Assembly (NCBI RefSeq): GCF_006345805.1
Contig: NC_043007.1
Location: forward strand, 19,344,001-19,408,000
Length of the DNA: 64,000 bases
Origin: Octopus sinensis
Taxonomy: Eukaryota
Direction: 5' to 3'
The notes under the pieces were generated by a model. It had not been told where the DNA came from, did not search any database, and worked only from the letters and a program-made list of their open reading frames with translations. Shown one piece after another: positions 1 through 62,179 of this stretch. The position numbers and the translations under genes were made by a program. The first letter of the stretch is position 1; each line of letters begins with the position of its first letter.

Positions 1-989
1 ATCCTTTTTTGTTTTTTTTGTTTGTATTTACTTATAGTTTGAAGGTCAAGAAATCGTAAAATACCAAAACAAACAAAAGTGTAATGCATAATATATTCAA
101 TCACTAAAAACATAACAAGTGATGCAACTGTATTATTATCTCTACCTTAGTGAAAGTAGAGGTATTGTTTTCAGTTGTCTTTGTTTGTTTGTCTGTCCTT
201 GGACAAGATATCTCAAGAACCACTGGATGGATTCAGATGAAACTTTCAAGGATGTTTGGTCTCGTGCCTGGCACAAACTGATTAGATTTTGGGATCGATC
301 TGGTATTGGACAAAGATACTGGATTATTTTTCCGTTTATTTTTTACTTAATTTTTGAGAGCGGTCAGGTTAATTTTTAGTATTCTTGTTTGTGAGATCAG
401 TCGAGTTTATTTCAGATATTCTCATTTTACAAATCACTTCTGGCTAATCATTGAGACGACATTGGTGTTGCCTTGGCGGAGATTTGTGCTCTCTGAGTGC
501 TCTTTTTATTATCATTATGATAATCATTAATATTACTACATGCAAGGGCCTTTAATGCTTGATAGCTCTCTCATACATGCAAACATACACACTATCTCCC
601 CTCTGTACATACATATACATATGCTTACACACACACACACACACAATCATCATCATCATCATCATGTAACTTCACTTTCCATCCTGGCATGGGTTAGATG
701 GTTTGATTGGAACTAGTTCCAGTATGATTTGGCATGGTTTCTATGGCTCTATGCCCTTCCTAATGCCAACCACTCCAAGAATGTAATGGATGCTTTTAAT
801 AATGTGTGTATATTGATATATATACATGTCATTATATGAGTATTTTTTTATAAATATTTTATATATATGGATGTACACATCTTCATCATCATTTAACGTC
901 CACTTTTCCATGCCTGCATGGGTCACATGGAATTTGTTGAAGCAGATTTTGTACACATCCATACAGTGGGACTGAACCTGAAACCAGAG

Positions 990-1358
990 AGTTGGGAAGC
1001 AGGCTTCTTTATCCATACAACTGAGACCCCCTTCGGTCATGACTGACCATGGGATTACACCTAGGAAGTTACCCTCCAAAGTACAAGTCTGGGCAAGGTT
1101 GTTTATGGAAGACCAGCAGCCGCCCATGCATACCAGCCTCCCCTCTCCATGCCACCAGTGTTATCCAAGGGAAAGGCAAAGGGGCCGATACAGCTTGGCC
1201 CCTGTGACGTTGCAACTCATTTCTACAACTGAGTGAACTGGAGTAATGTGAAATAAAGTGTCTTGCTCAAGAACATAACACACAGCCCGGTCCGGGATTC
1301 GAGCTCACAACCTCACGATCGTAAGCTCGATGCTCTAACCACTGAGCCATGTGCCTTC
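990..1358 (-). mobile_element. tRNA-derived SINE with conserved central domain (superfamily not resolved); related fragments at about 37890-38165 and 56660-56950
   Basis: Minus strand starts ggcacatggctcagtggttagagc (A box) ... gagctcgaatccc (B box), then ttcttgagcaagacactttatttcaca shared by the other copies. Confidence 0.7.
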
Positions 1359-2236
1359 ACATCCATACAACTACACCCATATGTTATGTATATTTACACA
1401 CACACACACACAGATATACATCATTTTTGGATACTGAAACTTTACAAGTTATCGTCTGAAGTATCTTTTCTCTAATCTAAACACAATTATGAAACGGTAA
1501 ATAAACATACGGTGGACGTTTTTGAATAATGCAAGTTCCGATTGTATAAAATGGCGCAAAAGGTTGTGTAATGCAGACTGTTAGTTGTGAAAGAGGAAGG
1601 AGAATGTACCATCACTTAGAGGTGGGATGATGGGGTTACGCAAAATTATGTAGATATGTTTTTTGGAAATTCGGAAAAAATATGAAAAAAATGTGAGTAT
1701 ATGTGTGAGAATATAAAAAAATATTAAAAAATTGCATGCAAGTTAAAGAATCTAATTTTGCAAGAAAAATAACTCAAAAATTCGAGATGTTTCTGCAACA
1801 CATAAATCTCCAAAAAATGGAATCAGTAATGGAGAAATCAAGATTCATATTGTTCTGAAATTAGTAATAATTTCAAAGGTCATCTATTTAATGGTGTACT
1901 TTTGGAAAGTGAGAATTGTGAGGTATGTTATGACAACTTGTGTCTCAGGTTTTCATGACTGTTTTGAAAAAAAAAAAGTTGTAATTCATTTCATGAATTT
2001 GAATGAAAGCTGCCTGATACATTAGGAAGAAGTATATTCAGTGATTGATCATTTGATTTCAAAATACTCACAGCTTTCTTATAGAAACTAAAAGGGCTTC
2101 CAAAGGCTAATTGTAAATTTGTTTAAGAGTTTCTTGAATAAATATACAAATATATTTATAGTTTAAATGTATGAAGAAACATTGCCAAAGACTTTTTAAA
2201 TTCAATATTTTTCCATTTATCAATTAATTATAATTA

Positions 2237-2340
2237 TAAAGTTTTCAATAGAAACTCAGCTAAGGTAACCTAAAGTTTTCAATAGAAAGTTAGTTAAGGT
2301 AACCTAAAGTTTTCAATAGAAAGTCAGTTAAGGTAACCTA
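2237..2340. repeat. 34-bp unit x3 (taaagttttcaatagaaagtcagttaaggtaacc)
   Basis: Three adjacent near-identical copies. Confidence 0.9.
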
Positions 2341-2802
2341 ATGGTGGTGTAAAAATTTTGCGAAATTAGTTATCCACTTTAAACCAAAACAACTCTTTAA
2401 CACTAATAATACATTTTTTCTACTGAATTCCACTGGTCCTTCTTAATGGTAAATGCCCCTTGAAAGCCTTCATGCATTGTTACACCGTAATTTATAGTTT
2501 TTTTAGAATGCATTTTGGGATAACGAGATACATAAGCTTTTAAGCAGCAGATAAAGGGATTATATGTTTGATGTACTTGTTGCTTGAGAACTTCTATATC
2601 TTCTGTACTTATCTATCTAAGCTATACTTCATTCTTGACTTGTTGAACTTATTTAAGGTTTCCTGGTTTCTCATTTTATGGTGGTTTAGTTGTATATATT
2701 ACACCATAGATTTATATTGTGTGATTATCTTTCACAGGAATTCTAATACTGATAAGAGTAATAGTTATGTCAGGGTTTTGAGTTTATAAAAGTTTTGTCA
2801 CA

Positions 2803-2839
<37 letters not shown>

Positions 2840-4655
2840 AATATAACACATGTATTGTATGTGTTGATGTCTATACAAATATATTAAATGTGTTTGTATA
2901 AGCATTACATATATTAATATATATGTAATATTTCATATATATATACACTATATGCAATAAATGTGTTTTATGTATAAAAAATATATTAAACATGAATGCG
3001 TGTGTGCGTGTGTGAGTGTATTTATATATAATTTAGGCGACAGATACTGAGGCAACAAATACTAGCAGCCAAGCGCAGCACACAAGCTCATAGAAAGCCA
3101 AAATACATTGGAACTAAATAGCAATAATGGCATTGGTGAGGTGGGGGTGGGGTTGTGAAGACAGACAAGAAAGAGAGAGAGAGAAAGAGAGAAAGAGGCT
3201 GAAGGAGAATAGGAAGCAAAAAGGGAGAGAGAGTGAGAGAGAGAAAGTAAGGGAGTGATTGGAGAGAGATGAATATCAAAGGTATGTAGATATGTTTTGG
3301 GATTAATAGACACTCAAAGAGAATGGTAAATTATTGATGGTAGGGGTTATGGTGTGGGAAGCAAACCATTAGTTGTAGAGGAATCGTCCAGTGAGGTCAA
3401 CAGTCAGGAAACCGAAGGACATCATTTGATAAATGAGAAGAATTGGCAAGAACTTTTGGGAATAGACAGGCTCCCTACAGTCTATTTGGTTTTCTTGCCT
3501 AAAGTACAGACATTGCCTTTATTACATAATGGTAAAGTTTGGCATGGCGTTAATAATTCCAGTGCTTTAGATACTGAGTTCATTTCCTCCTGTACTTTTG
3601 AGCACTTTGAGCAGCAAGTTTGACTCCGCTGGTTTTTGTTGGAGGCAGGTTTCTCTGCCTCTGACCATGTGATAATTGACCCCTTTTGTGCAAATTATGA
3701 ATGTTCTATGCCATGTGCTTCCCAGTTTTTTTTTCCTTTTTCCATCTGATGTCATCTTTTTGAAAGCTGTTCTGGGAGGCAATTGACAGATTCACCTATC
3801 TGGGTAATAGCATCAGTAACAAAGGCAATATTTAGACTAACATCAACCATGGAATTGGCAAAGCTGTGACCGTATTCCAGAGAATGTGTGTTAGTTAATC
3901 CTCCAATACAGTTGGCTTACTCAGGGTTGGTAACAGAGCCGGTTTCAGCTGGGTTGGTAACAAGGGTTAAGCATAAAAAATGTAAGTTATTTGTAGTGGG
4001 CTATTTTATAGCCATGTTTTAAGGTTTATACCATTCTTTAAGAATTCATTTTGAAATTTTATTTTTGTGGGGAAATGACTAAATGAAGATGTGTACAGTG
4101 TAATTTTAGAGACCAGAAGGAATGGTTTGCTGAACGCCCCCCAGCCCCACAAAAAAACTAATGAGTAAGCCTTGATTTTGAAGCCTGTTTTGGACTTCAT
4201 GAAACTTCATAAAGAATGAAAGGCATTGGAGTTAAGTAATGTTTTTAAAGGAAGGGAAGACATGGCAAAGGGTAGCAGAATAGGGGAGAGAGATATGGAG
4301 GGGTGTAAAGGAAAAGAGAGAGGGAGAGAGAAGGAGGGGGTGAGAAAAGAGAAGAGAGATAAAGAAGAAAGAAAAAAAGAGAGAGTGGGGAGATATATCC
4401 TTACTCCCGAAAATTCTTAGAAACACAAGGAAGGAGGGTTTGAATGAACAAGTAGGGGTCACAATGAAAAACGTCTCCAACTCCCTACCTTGTCCCCTCA
4501 CCTCTCCATCCCCTCACCACTATATATTGACTCACTCATATATAATATATATATATATAAAAGAAAATAAATTAAAAAAAAAAGACATTGCGGGTACGCA
4601 TGGCACGAAGAATTTACAGAAATAGCAGCACATCAGCAGAAACAGATTGGCTCAC

Positions 4656-4667
4656 TTTGTCAAAATC
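4656..4667 (-). CDS. PLCB4: Candidate 12-nt in-frame microexon (DFDK) in the PLC-beta X-Y linker
   Basis: Minus strand tcttttcctgcag|GATTTTGACAAA|gtgagc; phase 0-0 matches the upstream exon; flanks are unique and CpG-rich. Confidence 0.6.
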
Positions 4668-4745
4668 CTGCAGGAAAAGATTTTGATCCAGTACCATAAG
4701 GCTCCGCCGGGGGTGGGGACGGGAGAGAAAGAGGGATAGATAGAT

Positions 4746-4780
<35 letters not shown>

Positions 4781-5189
4781 AAGAGAAGAGGGACAGGTTT
4801 GAAAAAAGAAAAGAAAAAGAGAAGAAAGATATATGTTAATAAAGAAGAGCGTTAAATTGTGTAAAATGTGATTAAAAACAACAATAACAAAAAAAAAAAC
4901 TAAAACATAACTTTCAAAAATAACTTAAATAATAATTCATAATGATTTTATAAAATTAAAAAAAAACAACAAAACTGTGAAACAGGTGTTAAGAACTGTT
5001 AGGTTTAAAATGCCAAAATGTGAATAAAATTAGGGAAAATGTGACAAAGTAACAAAGAAGTTAGATGTGAGTGAAACAAAATGTAAAGATATTTAATAAA
5101 GTTATGTGAAACGTTGAAGACACATCAATGTGTTTTAGAAAGGAATAAAAAAAAATTAATATAAAAGATGCTAAAACACAGAAAAATAA

Positions 5190-17480: not shown

Positions 17481-59020
<41,540 letters not shown>

Positions 59021-60443: not shown

Positions 60444-61782
60444 ATCATCATCATCATTGTTTAATGTCCGCTTTCCATGCTAGCATAGGTTGGACGATTT
60501 GACTGAGGATTGGAACCAGATGGCTGCACCAGGCTCCAATCTTGATCTGGCAGAGTTTCTATAGCTGAATGCCCTTCCTGATGCCAACCACTCTGAGAGT
60601 GTAGTGGGTCTTTTATGTGCCACCGGCACGAGGGCCAGTCTGGTGGTACTGGCAATGGCCACGCTCGAAAATGGTGTTTTTTAACTTGCCATCTGCACAG
60701 GAGCCAGTCCAGCAGCACTGGCAACGACCTCTCTCGAATGTTTTTTCACATGCCACCGGCACAAGTGCCAGTAAGGTGATGCTGGTAGTGATCACGCTCG
60801 AATGGTGCTTTTTACGTGACACCGGCATGGAAGCCAGTTAGCTGCTCTGGCAACGATTATGCTCAGATGGTGCTCTTTGCACTCCACTAGCACAGATACC
60901 AGTCATTGAATTTGATTTCGATTTCACTTGCCTCAACAGGTCTTCACAAGCAGAGTTTAGTATCCAATGAAGTAAAGGTATGCATAAAGTGGGCTGGTTA
61001 CACCCCTGGCATAGGCCACGAGGTTATGGTCTCATTTGGCTTGCCGGGTCCTCTCAAACACAGCATATTTCCAAAAGTCTCGGTCACTAGTCATTGCCTT
61101 GGTGAGGCCTAATGTTTGAAGGTCGTGCTTCATCACTTCATCCCAGGTGTTCCTGGTTCTACTTCTTCCAAAGGTTCCCTCAACTGCTAGGGTGTGACAC
61201 TTTTTCACACAGCTATCCTCATCCATTCTCACCACATGACCATACCAGCGTAGTCATCTCTCTTGCACACCACAACTGATGCTTCTTAGGTCCAACATTT
61301 CTCTCAAGGTACTTACACTCTGTAAAGCACACTGACATTACACATCCATTGGAGCATGCTGGCTTCATTCCTCGCGAGCTTACGCATGTCCTCAGCAGTC
61401 ACAACCCATGTTTCACTACCATGTAGCAAGGCTGTTCATACACATGTGTCATACAGTCTACTTTTTACACTGAGCGAGAGGCCCTTTGTCACCAGCAGAG
61501 GTAAGAGCTCTCTGAACTTTGCCCAGGCTATTCTTATTCTAGCAGCTACCCTTTCAGTGCACCCTTCCCCGCTACTGACTTGGTCACCTAGGTAACGGAA
61601 GCTATCAACTACTTCTAGTTTTTCTCCCTGGAATGTGGCAGAAGTTGTTCTCTGCGCATTTTCAGTGTTTATTGCTCCTGAGCATCTGCCACATACAAAA
61701 ACTATCTTCCCAGTTAGCCTTCTTTTGATATTGCTGCACCTCTTATGTGCCCATAGCAAATACTGGGTACATCTTATAGAGG
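60444..61782 (-). mobile_element. 5'-truncated RTE-clade LINE (ORF2 C-terminus plus 3' UTR), degenerate
   Basis: LWAHKRCSNIKRRL...CGRC, LEVVDSFRYLGDQVS...RIRIAWAKFRELLPLL, GRSRTRNTWDEVMKHDL...DRDFWKYAV; (ATG)n tail. Confidence 0.88.
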
Positions 61783-62179
61783 GTAAATATACATATATAA
61801 ATACTTGTGAAGACCTGTTGAGGCAAGTGAAAATCAAAATTGAAATCAATCAACATCAATGGAAATTATAGCTGTGATACCTGTGCCGGTGGCACATAAG
61901 AGAACCATCCGAACATGGCCGTTGCCAGCGCCGCCCCGACTGGCCTCTGTGCCGGTGGCACGTAAAAAGCACCGTCCGATCGTGGCCATTTGCCAGCCTC
62001 GTCTGGCACTTGTGCAGGTGGCACGTAAAAAGCATCCACTACACTCACGGAGTGGTTGGCATTAGGAAGGGCATCCAGCTGTAGAAACACTGCCAGATCA
62101 GAGGTGGCCTGGCGCAGCCTCCTGGCTTCTGAGAACTGTCCAACCCATGCTAGCATGGAAAACGGACGTTAAACGATGA

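What the first reader, a model, noticed from the sequence alone, without database searches (positions are those of the whole stretch)
4656..4667. Candidate 12-nt microexon (DFDK) in the autoinhibitory X-Y linker of PLC-beta
The minus strand reads tcttttcctgcag|GATTTTGACAAA|gtgagc: a good acceptor with UGC next to the AG, a consensus donor, and a frame-preserving phase 0-0 that matches the preceding exon (...SSSGKK|). It lies about 12.8 kb downstream of that exon. The X-Y linker controls PLC-beta autoinhibition, and UGC-containing acceptors typify Srrm/eMIC-regulated neural microexons. This could be a neural- or retina-specific activity switch that annotation would likely miss.
Basis: partly seen in the sequence, partly recalled or inferred. 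Interest (0 to 1): 0.72.

Follow-up and report, generated by a model that had tools for sequence, protein, structure and literature searches.

The report
Unverified 12-base microexon candidate in PLC-beta
A 12-base stretch with strong splice signals sits in frame inside a long intron of an octopus-like PLC-beta4/norpA gene; it could add four amino acids (DFDK) to the enzyme's self-inhibiting linker, but with no RNA or cross-species data available it is about even odds that it is a real exon.

Summary
The sequence is exactly as reported: minus strand tcttttcctgcag|GATTTTGACAAA|gtgagc, exon 4667..4656. The host gene is a PLC-beta of the beta4/norpA type on the minus strand. The preceding linker exon (17602..17481) ends in phase 0 (...SSSGKK|), 12,813 nt upstream, so inclusion would add DFDK in frame.

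Both splice sites score as well as this gene's real exons. No other pair this strong occurs on either strand of the window. Shuffles give 0.07 such pairs per 64 kb and 0.01 frame-preserving, stop-free ones. That is above chance for one window, but hundreds of such decoys are expected genome-wide.

The upstream intron partly matches the published Srrm/eMIC microexon code: UGC at -5, a dense UCUC tract and few AGs. The 3' splice site, however, is strong and compact, which is atypical. (CT)n tracts are common on this strand, and a constitutive exon also has a UGCAG acceptor.

The decisive tests could not be run. The next (Y-domain) exon lies outside the window. No cephalopod transcript or orthologous intron was reachable. 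One distant cephalopod-like contig confirms only the ...SGKK|gt junction.

Verdict: credible but unproven. Real cassette microexon about 0.45, chance pseudo-exon about 0.42. Tissue specificity and an effect on autoinhibition are conjecture.

The parts
4656..4667 (-). Candidate 12-nt cassette microexon GATTTTGACAAA; in phase 0 it encodes Asp-Phe-Asp-Lys
   Evidence: Sequence read. Frame derived from the exon chain. No second copy in the window.
4668..4680 (-). Candidate 3' splice site tcttttcctgcag: a 9-nt pyrimidine tract, then UGC at -5..-3 overlapping the CAG
   Evidence: The acceptor score of 11.98 bits is exceeded only by the real exon at 59020 among this gene's 11 acceptors.
4650..4655 (-). 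Candidate 5' splice site AAA|gtgagc (GTRAG consensus; -1 is A and +6 is C)
   Evidence: The donor score of 7.59 bits sits at the median of this gene's 12 real donors.
4696..4700 (-). Possible branch point cuuAu (yUnAy), with the A about 30 nt upstream of the AG. There is no AG between it and the acceptor.
   Evidence: Motif scan. A prediction only; no CURAY-type strong branch point was found within 260 nt.
4721..4807 (-). CU-rich tract, with (CT)n on the sense strand, 54-140 nt upstream of the candidate. There are 33 UCUC/CUCU tetramers in the upstream 150 nt. The only AG in the 234 nt upstream is at -36.
   Evidence: Only 1.1% of sense-strand positions have 30 or more such tetramers in the upstream 150 nt.
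17481..17602 (-). Upstream X-Y linker exon (E)[40 protein letters not shown], ending in phase 0. It would be the splice partner of the candidate.
   Evidence: An orthologous exon ending ...SGKK|gtgagt is found in contigs L001-L003.
20720..20830 (-). Linker exon (K)[36 protein letters not shown], phase 1 to 1
22299..22389 (-). Last X-domain exon [30 protein letters not shown], phase 0 to 1
1..4655 (-). Rest of the same intron. It contains no Y-domain exon, so the downstream constitutive exon lies beyond the window and the intron is at least 17,480 nt long.
   Evidence: ORF scan. tblastn with five PLC-beta4-type fragments that reach the Y domain found no match below 17.4 kb.

Best explanation
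The 12-mer is a real, alternatively included cassette microexon of an octopus-type PLC-beta4/norpA gene.

Proposed mechanism. In cells that express the microexon machinery (an Srrm234-type protein with an eMIC domain), the factor binds the UGC between the short pyrimidine tract and the AG. It helps U2AF/U2 assemble on an exon too short for normal exon definition, and the GUGAG donor recruits U1. Elsewhere the exon is skipped together with the 17.5-kb or longer intron, possibly helped by PTB-type repressors on the upstream CU-rich tract. Inclusion inserts Asp-Phe-Asp-Lys after ...GLSSSGKK. That position is in the disordered part of the X-Y linker, just upstream of the segment that in other PLC-beta enzymes covers the active site. 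The insert could therefore alter basal autoinhibition or a linker-mediated interaction.

Shown here: the sequence, the frame, the gene context, the splice-site strength, the rarity against shuffles, and a partial match to the published cis code.

Inferred: that the exon is used at all, its regulator, its tissue distribution, and any effect on the enzyme.
For: - Exact sequence and phase 0.
- Splice-site scores equal to or better than the median of this gene's real exons.
- It is the only pair of this strength in 128 kb of both strands. Shuffles expect 0.07 pairs of any length and 0.01 frame-preserving, stop-free pairs per 64 kb. The pattern test expects 0.01.
- It is not part of a repeat copied elsewhere in the window. 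The only other relaxed-threshold decoy (37351..37331) belongs to a repeated element.
- UGC at -5, a UCUC-rich tract upstream and a nearly AG-free 234 nt match features reported for eMIC-dependent microexons in flies and mammals. UGC is present in 74-79% of human SRRM3/4-dependent microexons, against 12-21% of random AGs here.
- The host is a signalling gene of the class in which neural small exons evolve recurrently.
- The exon boundary after ...GKK is conserved in a distant relative.
Against: - There is no expression evidence of any kind, and no orthologous intron could be examined.
- The downstream exon is outside the window.
- The 3' splice site is strong and compact: a branch-point-like motif at about -30 and the pyrimidine tract abutting the AG. 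eMIC-dependent microexons typically have weak 3' splice-site regions with distal branch points.
- The CU-rich tract lies upstream of the predicted branch point and of an AG at -36. It is an ordinary (CT)n microsatellite of a kind that is 12 times commoner on this strand than on the other.
- UGCAG also precedes the constitutive linker exon.
- Strong sites alone do not make a 12-nt exon recognisable. By my extrapolation, a 2-3 Gb genome would hold a few hundred equally good in-frame decoys.
- The scoring matrix is generic and recalled from memory, not trained on cephalopods.
Confidence: 0.45

Rival explanations
1. Chance pseudo-exon. A short pyrimidine run plus CAG happens to lie 12 nt upstream of a GTGAG in a long, repeat-rich, pyrimidine-skewed intron. 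The unit is never, or only at noise level, spliced into mRNA and is removed with the intron.
For: - Extrapolating the shuffle rate of 0.01-0.07 per 64 kb gives hundreds of such units in a genome of this size, so a scan of many windows will surface some.
- At slightly relaxed thresholds, decoys occur at about the chance rate: 2 observed against 0.58 expected on the sense strand, and one of the two is repeat-derived.
- The supporting cis features are cheap here. (CT)n tracts and long AG-free runs are frequent on this strand (26 AG-free gaps of 150 nt or more). UGC near an AG is found at 12-21% of sites.
- The strong compact acceptor does not look like a typical eMIC target.
- Nothing resembling DFDK occurs at this position in the 17 PLC-beta4-type linker fragments retrieved.
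Against: - It is the single best pair in the window on either strand, and it is frame-preserving and stop-free.
- It lies in unique sequence, not in a recognisable repeat.
- UGC, a CU-rich tract and AG depletion occur together, as the literature predicts for this exon class.
Confidence: 0.42
2. The acceptor or donor is used, but not as a 12-nt coding cassette. For example, it could be a longer cryptic or poison exon using another donor. Or it could be an alternative terminal exon reading DFDKVSQSVSADVLLFL* and giving a truncated, Y-less product that is presumably degraded.
For: The acceptor is among the strongest in the window. If the donor is ignored, the frame reads on for 13 more codons to a stop.
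Against: The GTGAG donor directly after the 12-mer is much better than the next GTs downstream. No polyadenylation evidence was sought or seen. A protein with only the X domain has no known role.
Confidence: 0.06
3. Recursive-splicing site or recursive exon used as a stepping stone to remove the long intron.
For: It sits 12.8 kb into an intron of at least 17.5 kb and has a strong acceptor.
Against: After joining to the upstream exon, the junction would read AAAAAA|GATTTT, which does not rebuild a GT 5' splice site. The defining feature is therefore absent.
Confidence: 0.02

Closest known systems
Srrm3/4 / Srrm234 (eMIC-domain)-dependent neural microexons of vertebrates and insects
   Same: The length is 12 nt, a multiple of 3. 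It sits in a signalling gene and inserts a few charged or aromatic residues in a surface or disordered segment next to a domain. There is a UGC between the pyrimidine tract and the AG, a CU-rich tract upstream, few upstream AGs, and a long host intron.
   Different: The 3' splice site is strong and compact rather than weak with a distal branch point. The CU-rich tract is an ordinary microsatellite lying upstream of the nearest branch-point-like motif and of one AG. Neural inclusion, regulator dependence and conservation are all untested.
Alternative in-frame internal segment of vertebrate PLCB4
   Same: It is the same orthology group (beta4/norpA type). The review read states that PLC-beta4 variants differ by an internal segment. 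From my memory, and unverified, the human isoforms of 1175 and 1187 residues differ by 12 residues placed in the X-Y linker right after ...ANSVKK. That would be the junction homologous to ...SSSGKK| here.
   Different: The vertebrate segment would be 36 nt, not 12, with no sequence resemblance to DFDK. I could not confirm its position with the tools, so the parallel is a lead and not a result.
Drosophila norpA retina versus non-retina isoforms (mutually exclusive exon 4)
   Same: It is tissue-specific splicing of the rhabdomeric phototransduction PLC-beta (established knowledge, from memory).
   Different: It is a mutually exclusive pair of normal-sized exons near the N-terminal region, not a microexon in the X-Y linker.
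X-Y linker autoinhibition of PLC-beta (PLC-beta2, PLC-beta3 and cephalopod PLC21 structures 2zkm, 4qj3, 3qr0, 3qr1)
   Same: The candidate would alter the linker that occludes the active site in these enzymes. The structures appear among the best sequence matches. The linker's role is established knowledge.
   Different: Squid and cuttlefish PLC21 are a different paralogue from the gene here. Their linkers do not align with this one beyond KILIKNK. The effect of a 4-residue insert is unknown.

Membership tests
PLC-beta, beta4/norpA subtype (host gene) | PI-PLC X catalytic domain plus PLC-type EF-hands | tested here: met
   Pfam PI-PLC-X 2e-61, EF-hand_like 3e-14 and PLCB1-4-like_EFh 1.5e-12 on the concatenated exons.
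PLC-beta, beta4/norpA subtype (host gene) | Closer to beta4/norpA-type than to beta1-3/PLC21-type sequences | tested here: met
   83-85% identity to beta4-type X domains, including one named beta-4. Alignments to PLC-beta2, beta3 and cephalopod PLC21 chains are visibly weaker.
PLC-beta, beta4/norpA subtype (host gene) | Y domain, C2 domain and the G-alpha-q-binding C-terminal domain | not testable with these tools
   These exons lie beyond position 1 of the window.
Cassette microexon | Length of 3-27/30 nt, a multiple of 3, with an open frame in the phase of the flanking exons | tested here: met
   12 nt, phase 0 after ...GKK|, no stop.
Cassette microexon | Flanked by competent 3' and 5' splice sites | tested here: met
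   Scores of 11.98 and 7.59 bits, within or above the range of this gene's real sites. This shows consensus only, not use.
Cassette microexon | Present in mature mRNA | not testable with these tools
   No cephalopod transcript-derived protein or contig was reachable.
Cassette microexon | Conservation of the exon and its flanking intron in related species | not testable with these tools
   The only related contigs (L001-L003) cover 2.2 kb of unalignable intron and hold no DFDK-like unit.
Srrm/eMIC-dependent neural microexon | UGC motif close to the 3' splice site, between the pyrimidine tract and the AG | tested here: met
   UGC at -5..-3. The background is 12% of AGs within 12 nt, and the same motif is present at the constitutive linker exon.
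Srrm/eMIC-dependent neural microexon | Long UCUC-rich pyrimidine tract upstream (bipartite UCUC...UGC enhancer) | tested here: inconclusive
   There are 33 UCUC/CUCU tetramers in the upstream 150 nt (top 1.1% of positions). The tract ends about 50 nt from the UGC and is a common (CT)n microsatellite.
Srrm/eMIC-dependent neural microexon | Long AG exclusion zone with a distal, strong branch point | tested here: inconclusive
   The nearest AG is at -36 and the next at -234. Only weak yUnAy motifs occur at -33 and -81, and there is no CURAY.
Srrm/eMIC-dependent neural microexon | Weak 3' splice-site region | tested here: not met
   Only one of the gene's 11 real acceptors scores higher.
Srrm/eMIC-dependent neural microexon | Neuron-restricted inclusion that depends on the eMIC domain | not testable with these tools
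   This needs RNA-seq or minigene assays.
Recursive splice site / recursive exon | The acceptor is followed by a sequence that rebuilds a GT 5' splice site after the first splicing step | tested here: not met
   The exon starts GA, so the junction would read AAAAAA|GATTTT.

The most novel reading that the evidence does not exclude
The 12-mer is a conserved coleoid microexon, included under Srrm234/eMIC control in photoreceptors and/or neurons. It inserts DFDK next to the autoinhibitory lid of the PLC-beta that drives rhabdomeric phototransduction and so sets basal or Gq-stimulated activity. It sits in the same linker intron where vertebrate PLCB4 carries its own small alternative exon. That would make this junction an ancient or convergent hotspot for tuning PLC-beta4-type enzymes by splicing.
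Probability: 0.12. Interest if true: 0.55.

Novelty: new member of a known kind. Interest (0 to 1): 0.33.

Why it matters
If real, it would be a tissue-specific switch in the self-inhibiting linker of the PLC-beta type used for invertebrate vision and neuronal Gq signalling. It would also add a cephalopod example to the neural microexon programme, in a gene family where small tissue-specific exons evolve repeatedly. It would give a simple, testable handle on how linker length and charge tune PLC-beta autoinhibition, by comparing the enzyme with and without four residues. If it is not real, it is an instructive strong decoy. It shows that consensus splice sites, UGC and a CU tract can co-occur by chance in pyrimidine-skewed, microsatellite-rich cephalopod introns.

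Tried and rejected
- **Downstream exon in the window.** I looked for the downstream Y-domain exon in 1..4655 to close the exon triplet. None was found.
- **Protein database, X domain plus linker.** This returned only short non-cephalopod PLC-beta4-type fragments.
- **Protein database, linker plus DFDK.** No hit.
- **Protein database, two-species linker profile.** No candidate.
- **Representative library with the single linker exon.** This gave P0122, a genomic ORF from a distant relative. Its contigs L001-L003 align only over the exon (71% nt) and hold no DFDK-like unit in 2.2 kb of intron.
- **Exact look-ups of two window ORFs beside the candidate.** Not on record.
- **Metagenome scans.** The spliced junction and the genomic site both gave 0 hits, as expected for that collection.
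- **PDB.** Squid and cuttlefish PLC21 turned out to be the other paralogue, so they say nothing about this linker.
- **Literature.** Nothing was found on a PLCB4, norpA or cephalopod linker microexon. The recalled vertebrate 12-residue insert could not be confirmed.
- **Repeat origin.** Rejected within the window.
- **Non-coding RNA at the site.** Rejected; the only Rfam hit is a 5S-like element at 42.3 kb.
- **A coding gene on the opposite strand at the site.** Rejected; only short low-complexity ORFs.
- **Recursive splicing.** Rejected on sequence.

Full report
**1. What is in the sequence**

On the minus strand the window reads ...ggcggagccttatggtactggatcaaaatcttttcctgcag|GATTTTGACAAA|gtgagccaatctg...

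**2. Host gene**

Stop-to-stop ORFs and tblastn with PLC-beta fragments show a PLC-beta gene on the minus strand. It runs from about 59 kb down past position 1. Exons whose boundaries I placed on AG/GT sites are:
- exons starting at 59020, 39274 (39274..39174), 36782 (36782..36728) and 31677 (31677..31569);
- 30032..29822;
- 27745..27652;
- 25999..25920;
- 23856..23772;
- 22389..22299;
- 20830..20720;
- 17602..17481.

Two further exons, ending at 48799 and 40383, have only their donors placed.

Pfam finds PI-PLC-X (2e-61), the PLC EF-hand-like domain and the PLCB1-4-like EF-hand in the concatenated translation. The X domain is 83-85% identical to beta4/norpA-type fragments from many animals, one of them named beta-4. 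Alignments to PLC-beta2, PLC-beta3 and the squid and cuttlefish PLC21 chains in the PDB are visibly weaker. The gene is therefore the beta4/norpA-type paralogue, not PLC21.

The composition points to a cephalopod genome: AT-rich, packed with (TA)n, (CA)n and (CT)n microsatellites, with very long introns. The only related genomic hit behaves like a distant cephalopod. This attribution is my inference, not a tool result.

**3. Frame and distance**

Exon 22389..22299 ends ...GAA AAA A|gtgagt, which is phase 1. Exon 20830..20720 is 111 nt and runs phase 1 to 1. Exon 17602..17481 is 122 nt and runs phase 1 to 0, ending ...TCG GGG AAA AAA|gtaatt, that is ...GLSSSGKK|.

The 12-mer would therefore be read GAT TTT GAC AAA, giving DFDK. 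It is 12,813 nt downstream of that exon.

No Y-domain exon exists between the candidate and the window edge. The intron is thus at least 17,480 nt long and the downstream partner exon is unknown. A 12-nt exon preserves the frame whatever that partner's phase is.

**4. Is it more than chance?**

I scored all AG and GT sites with a generic metazoan position matrix. The frequencies are from memory, so the absolute values are approximate.

| Site | Candidate score | This gene's real sites |
|---|---|---|
| Acceptor | 11.98 bits | 11 sites, 1.2-13.6, median about 9.7 |
| Donor | 7.59 bits | 12 sites, -0.2-10.4, median about 7.5 |

- At the candidate's own thresholds there is no other acceptor/donor pair 3-30 nt apart on either strand.
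- At thresholds set to the real-exon medians there are two pairs on the sense strand and none on the antisense strand. The second pair (37351..37331, 21 nt) belongs to a repeated element with another copy at 19834..19854.
- In 300 shuffles that keep dinucleotide content in 500-nt blocks, the mean was 0.07 pairs per 64 kb at the strict thresholds and 0.01 frame-preserving, stop-free pairs. At the relaxed thresholds the means were 0.58 and 0.15.
- The pattern tool gave the same picture for Y7-N-CAG-N12-GTRAG: one match, the candidate, against 0.01 expected.

The unit is unusual for one window (p roughly 0.01-0.06). Multiplied over a genome of a few gigabases, the same rate predicts a few hundred in-frame decoys of equal quality in sense-strand introns. 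That number is of the same order as, or larger than, the count of real microexons likely to have sites this strong. This last step is my extrapolation.

**5. Cis-regulatory context**

The literature read here describes eMIC-dependent microexons as follows:
- long pyrimidine tracts enriched in UCUC;
- long AG exclusion zones;
- strong but distal branch points;
- hence weak 3' splice-site regions, together with a bipartite UCUC...UGC enhancer.

These features come from the fly/mammal comparison and the human mutagenesis study.

The candidate compares as follows.
- It has UGC at -5..-3, directly between a 9-nt pyrimidine tract and the AG.
- It has 33 UCUC/CUCU tetramers in the upstream 150 nt; only 1.1% of sense-strand positions reach 30.
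- It has a single AG (gGAGc, at -36) in the 234 nt upstream.

Several points weaken these matches.
- The acceptor is strong and compact, with a yUnAy motif (cuuAu) at about -30 and no CURAY-type site.
- The CU tract is an ordinary (GA)n/(CT)n microsatellite. It lies upstream of that branch-point-like motif.
- CU-rich tracts are 12 times more frequent on this strand than on the other, and 26 AG-free runs of 150 nt or more occur on it.
- UGC within 12 nt precedes 12% of all AGs.
- The constitutive linker exon has the same cctgcag acceptor, with an even longer AG-free zone of 238 nt.

The match to the eMIC code is therefore partial. One tested feature, a weak 3' splice site, is not met.

**6. Other readings of the site**

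- The candidate region has no second copy in the window; only the microsatellite upstream matches elsewhere.
- No Rfam family matches at the site.
- Only short, low-complexity ORFs occur on either strand.
- It cannot be a recursive splice site, because the exon starts GA and would not rebuild a 5' splice site.
- If the donor were ignored, the frame would run DFDKVSQSVSADVLLFL*. That would be a truncating terminal or poison exon, which I consider unlikely.

**7. Attempts at decisive evidence**

- The large protein database holds no cephalopod PLC-beta4 transcript product. The X-domain query returned only short fragments from other phyla. The linker queries returned nothing.
- The representative library, queried with the single linker exon, gave P0122. 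This is an 83-residue ORF reading ...[42 protein letters not shown]|VSPS....
- P0122 lies on three Logan contigs of 2.2-2.7 kb (L001-L003). In them the orthologous exon is flanked by ...caaacag| and |gtgagt.
- Only the exon aligns to the window (71% nt identity). The 2.2 kb of intron downstream contains no AG-GAYTTYGAYAAR-GT and no acidic-aromatic-acidic-K unit with splice sites.
- This confirms that the ...SGKK| phase-0 junction is conserved. It says nothing about a site 12.8 kb into the octopus intron.
- Two flatworm- or nematode-like fragments also read through a junction after ...KK.
- Metagenome scans for the spliced junction and for the genomic 23-mer were empty.
- Exact look-ups of neighbouring window ORFs were not on record.
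- No paper in the library mentions a microexon in PLCB4, norpA or a cephalopod PLC.

**8. Protein context**

The insert would fall after an acidic or Ser-rich, Lys-terminated stretch of the X-Y linker. It would lie before the unseen exon that, in the orthologous fragments, carries ...Y(Q/T)GxTTN(I/V)HP-LSS-VNY..., the entry into the Y domain.

In solved PLC-beta structures, the C-terminal end of the linker lies over the active site, and removing it raises basal activity. This is established knowledge; the structures are listed. A four-residue insert at this point could plausibly change the reach or charge of that lid. Nothing here tests that.

I recall that vertebrate PLCB4 isoforms differ by a 12-residue segment placed right after ...ANSVKK, which would be the homologous junction. 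The review confirms only that an internal segment is alternative, and I could not verify its position. This remains a lead.

**9. Weighing**

For a real exon:
- the window-level rarity;
- unique sequence;
- correct frame;
- a partial eMIC-type context;
- a gene class prone to small tissue-specific exons.

Against:
- no expression or conservation data;
- a genome-wide decoy expectation in the hundreds;
- an atypically strong acceptor;
- supporting features that are cheap in this sequence environment.

I put a real, alternatively included microexon at about 0.45. A never-used pseudo-exon is at about 0.42. Other uses of the sites are at about 0.06, and recursive splicing at about 0.02.

**10. Novelty and interest**

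If confirmed, this is a new member of a well-known kind, a frame-preserving microexon in a signalling enzyme. It would have some added interest because of its position in the autoinhibitory linker of the phototransduction-type PLC-beta and a possible parallel with vertebrate PLCB4. As it stands it is a well-formed but unverified prediction. Public RNA-seq would settle it in minutes.

Noticed in passing
window 42313-42431 (+): A full-length 5S rRNA match (Rfam RF00001, 70 bits against a gathering score of 38) followed by a T-run. It lies antisense inside a PLC-beta intron. It may be a dispersed 5S gene or pseudogene, or the head of a 5S-derived SINE.
   Followed up: partly
window 17481-17602 (-) and its upstream 240 nt: The constitutive-looking linker exon has a 238-nt AG-free zone upstream (T-rich sequence and a (TA)n run), UGC at -5, and the weakest GT-A donor in the gene (AAA|gtaatt, 3.3 bits). 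It carries more of the 'regulated exon' features than most exons here and might itself be alternatively spliced.
   Followed up: partly
window 37331-37351 (-), related copy 19834-19854 (-): A second microexon-like unit (cttttctactctag|GCACAAGGCCCGAAATTTTGG|gtgagg, 21 nt, open frame) lies in another intron. It belongs to a repeated element with a second copy in the window, so it is probably a transposon-derived decoy.
   Followed up: partly
window 18505-19346 (+ coordinates): A recent tandem duplication in the intron before the linker exon: two 300-nt copies 99% identical, 542 nt apart, each preceded by a (TA)n run.
   Followed up: partly
whole window, minus versus plus strand: There is strong strand asymmetry across the gene. 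Cumulative GC skew rises almost monotonically on the plus strand. UCUC-rich tracts cover 4.3% of sense-strand positions against 0.34% of antisense positions. This fits transcription-coupled mutation bias or oriented (CT)n microsatellites.
   Followed up: no
L001-L003 (Logan ERR12921336, ERR12945498, ERR12921339), exon about 237-362: Genomic contigs from a distant relative carry the orthologous linker exon (59% identical over the aligned exon residues, 71% nt) with the same ...SGKK|gt phase-0 end. Their introns are unalignable to the window. The species was not identified.
   Followed up: partly
window 61035-61849 (-): ORFs such as ...LRWYGHVVRMDEDSCVKKCHTLAVEG...RTRNTWDEVMKHDL... resemble, from memory, the C-terminal tail of non-LTR retrotransposon ORF2 proteins. 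There were no Pfam hits at E<=0.01.
   Followed up: partly
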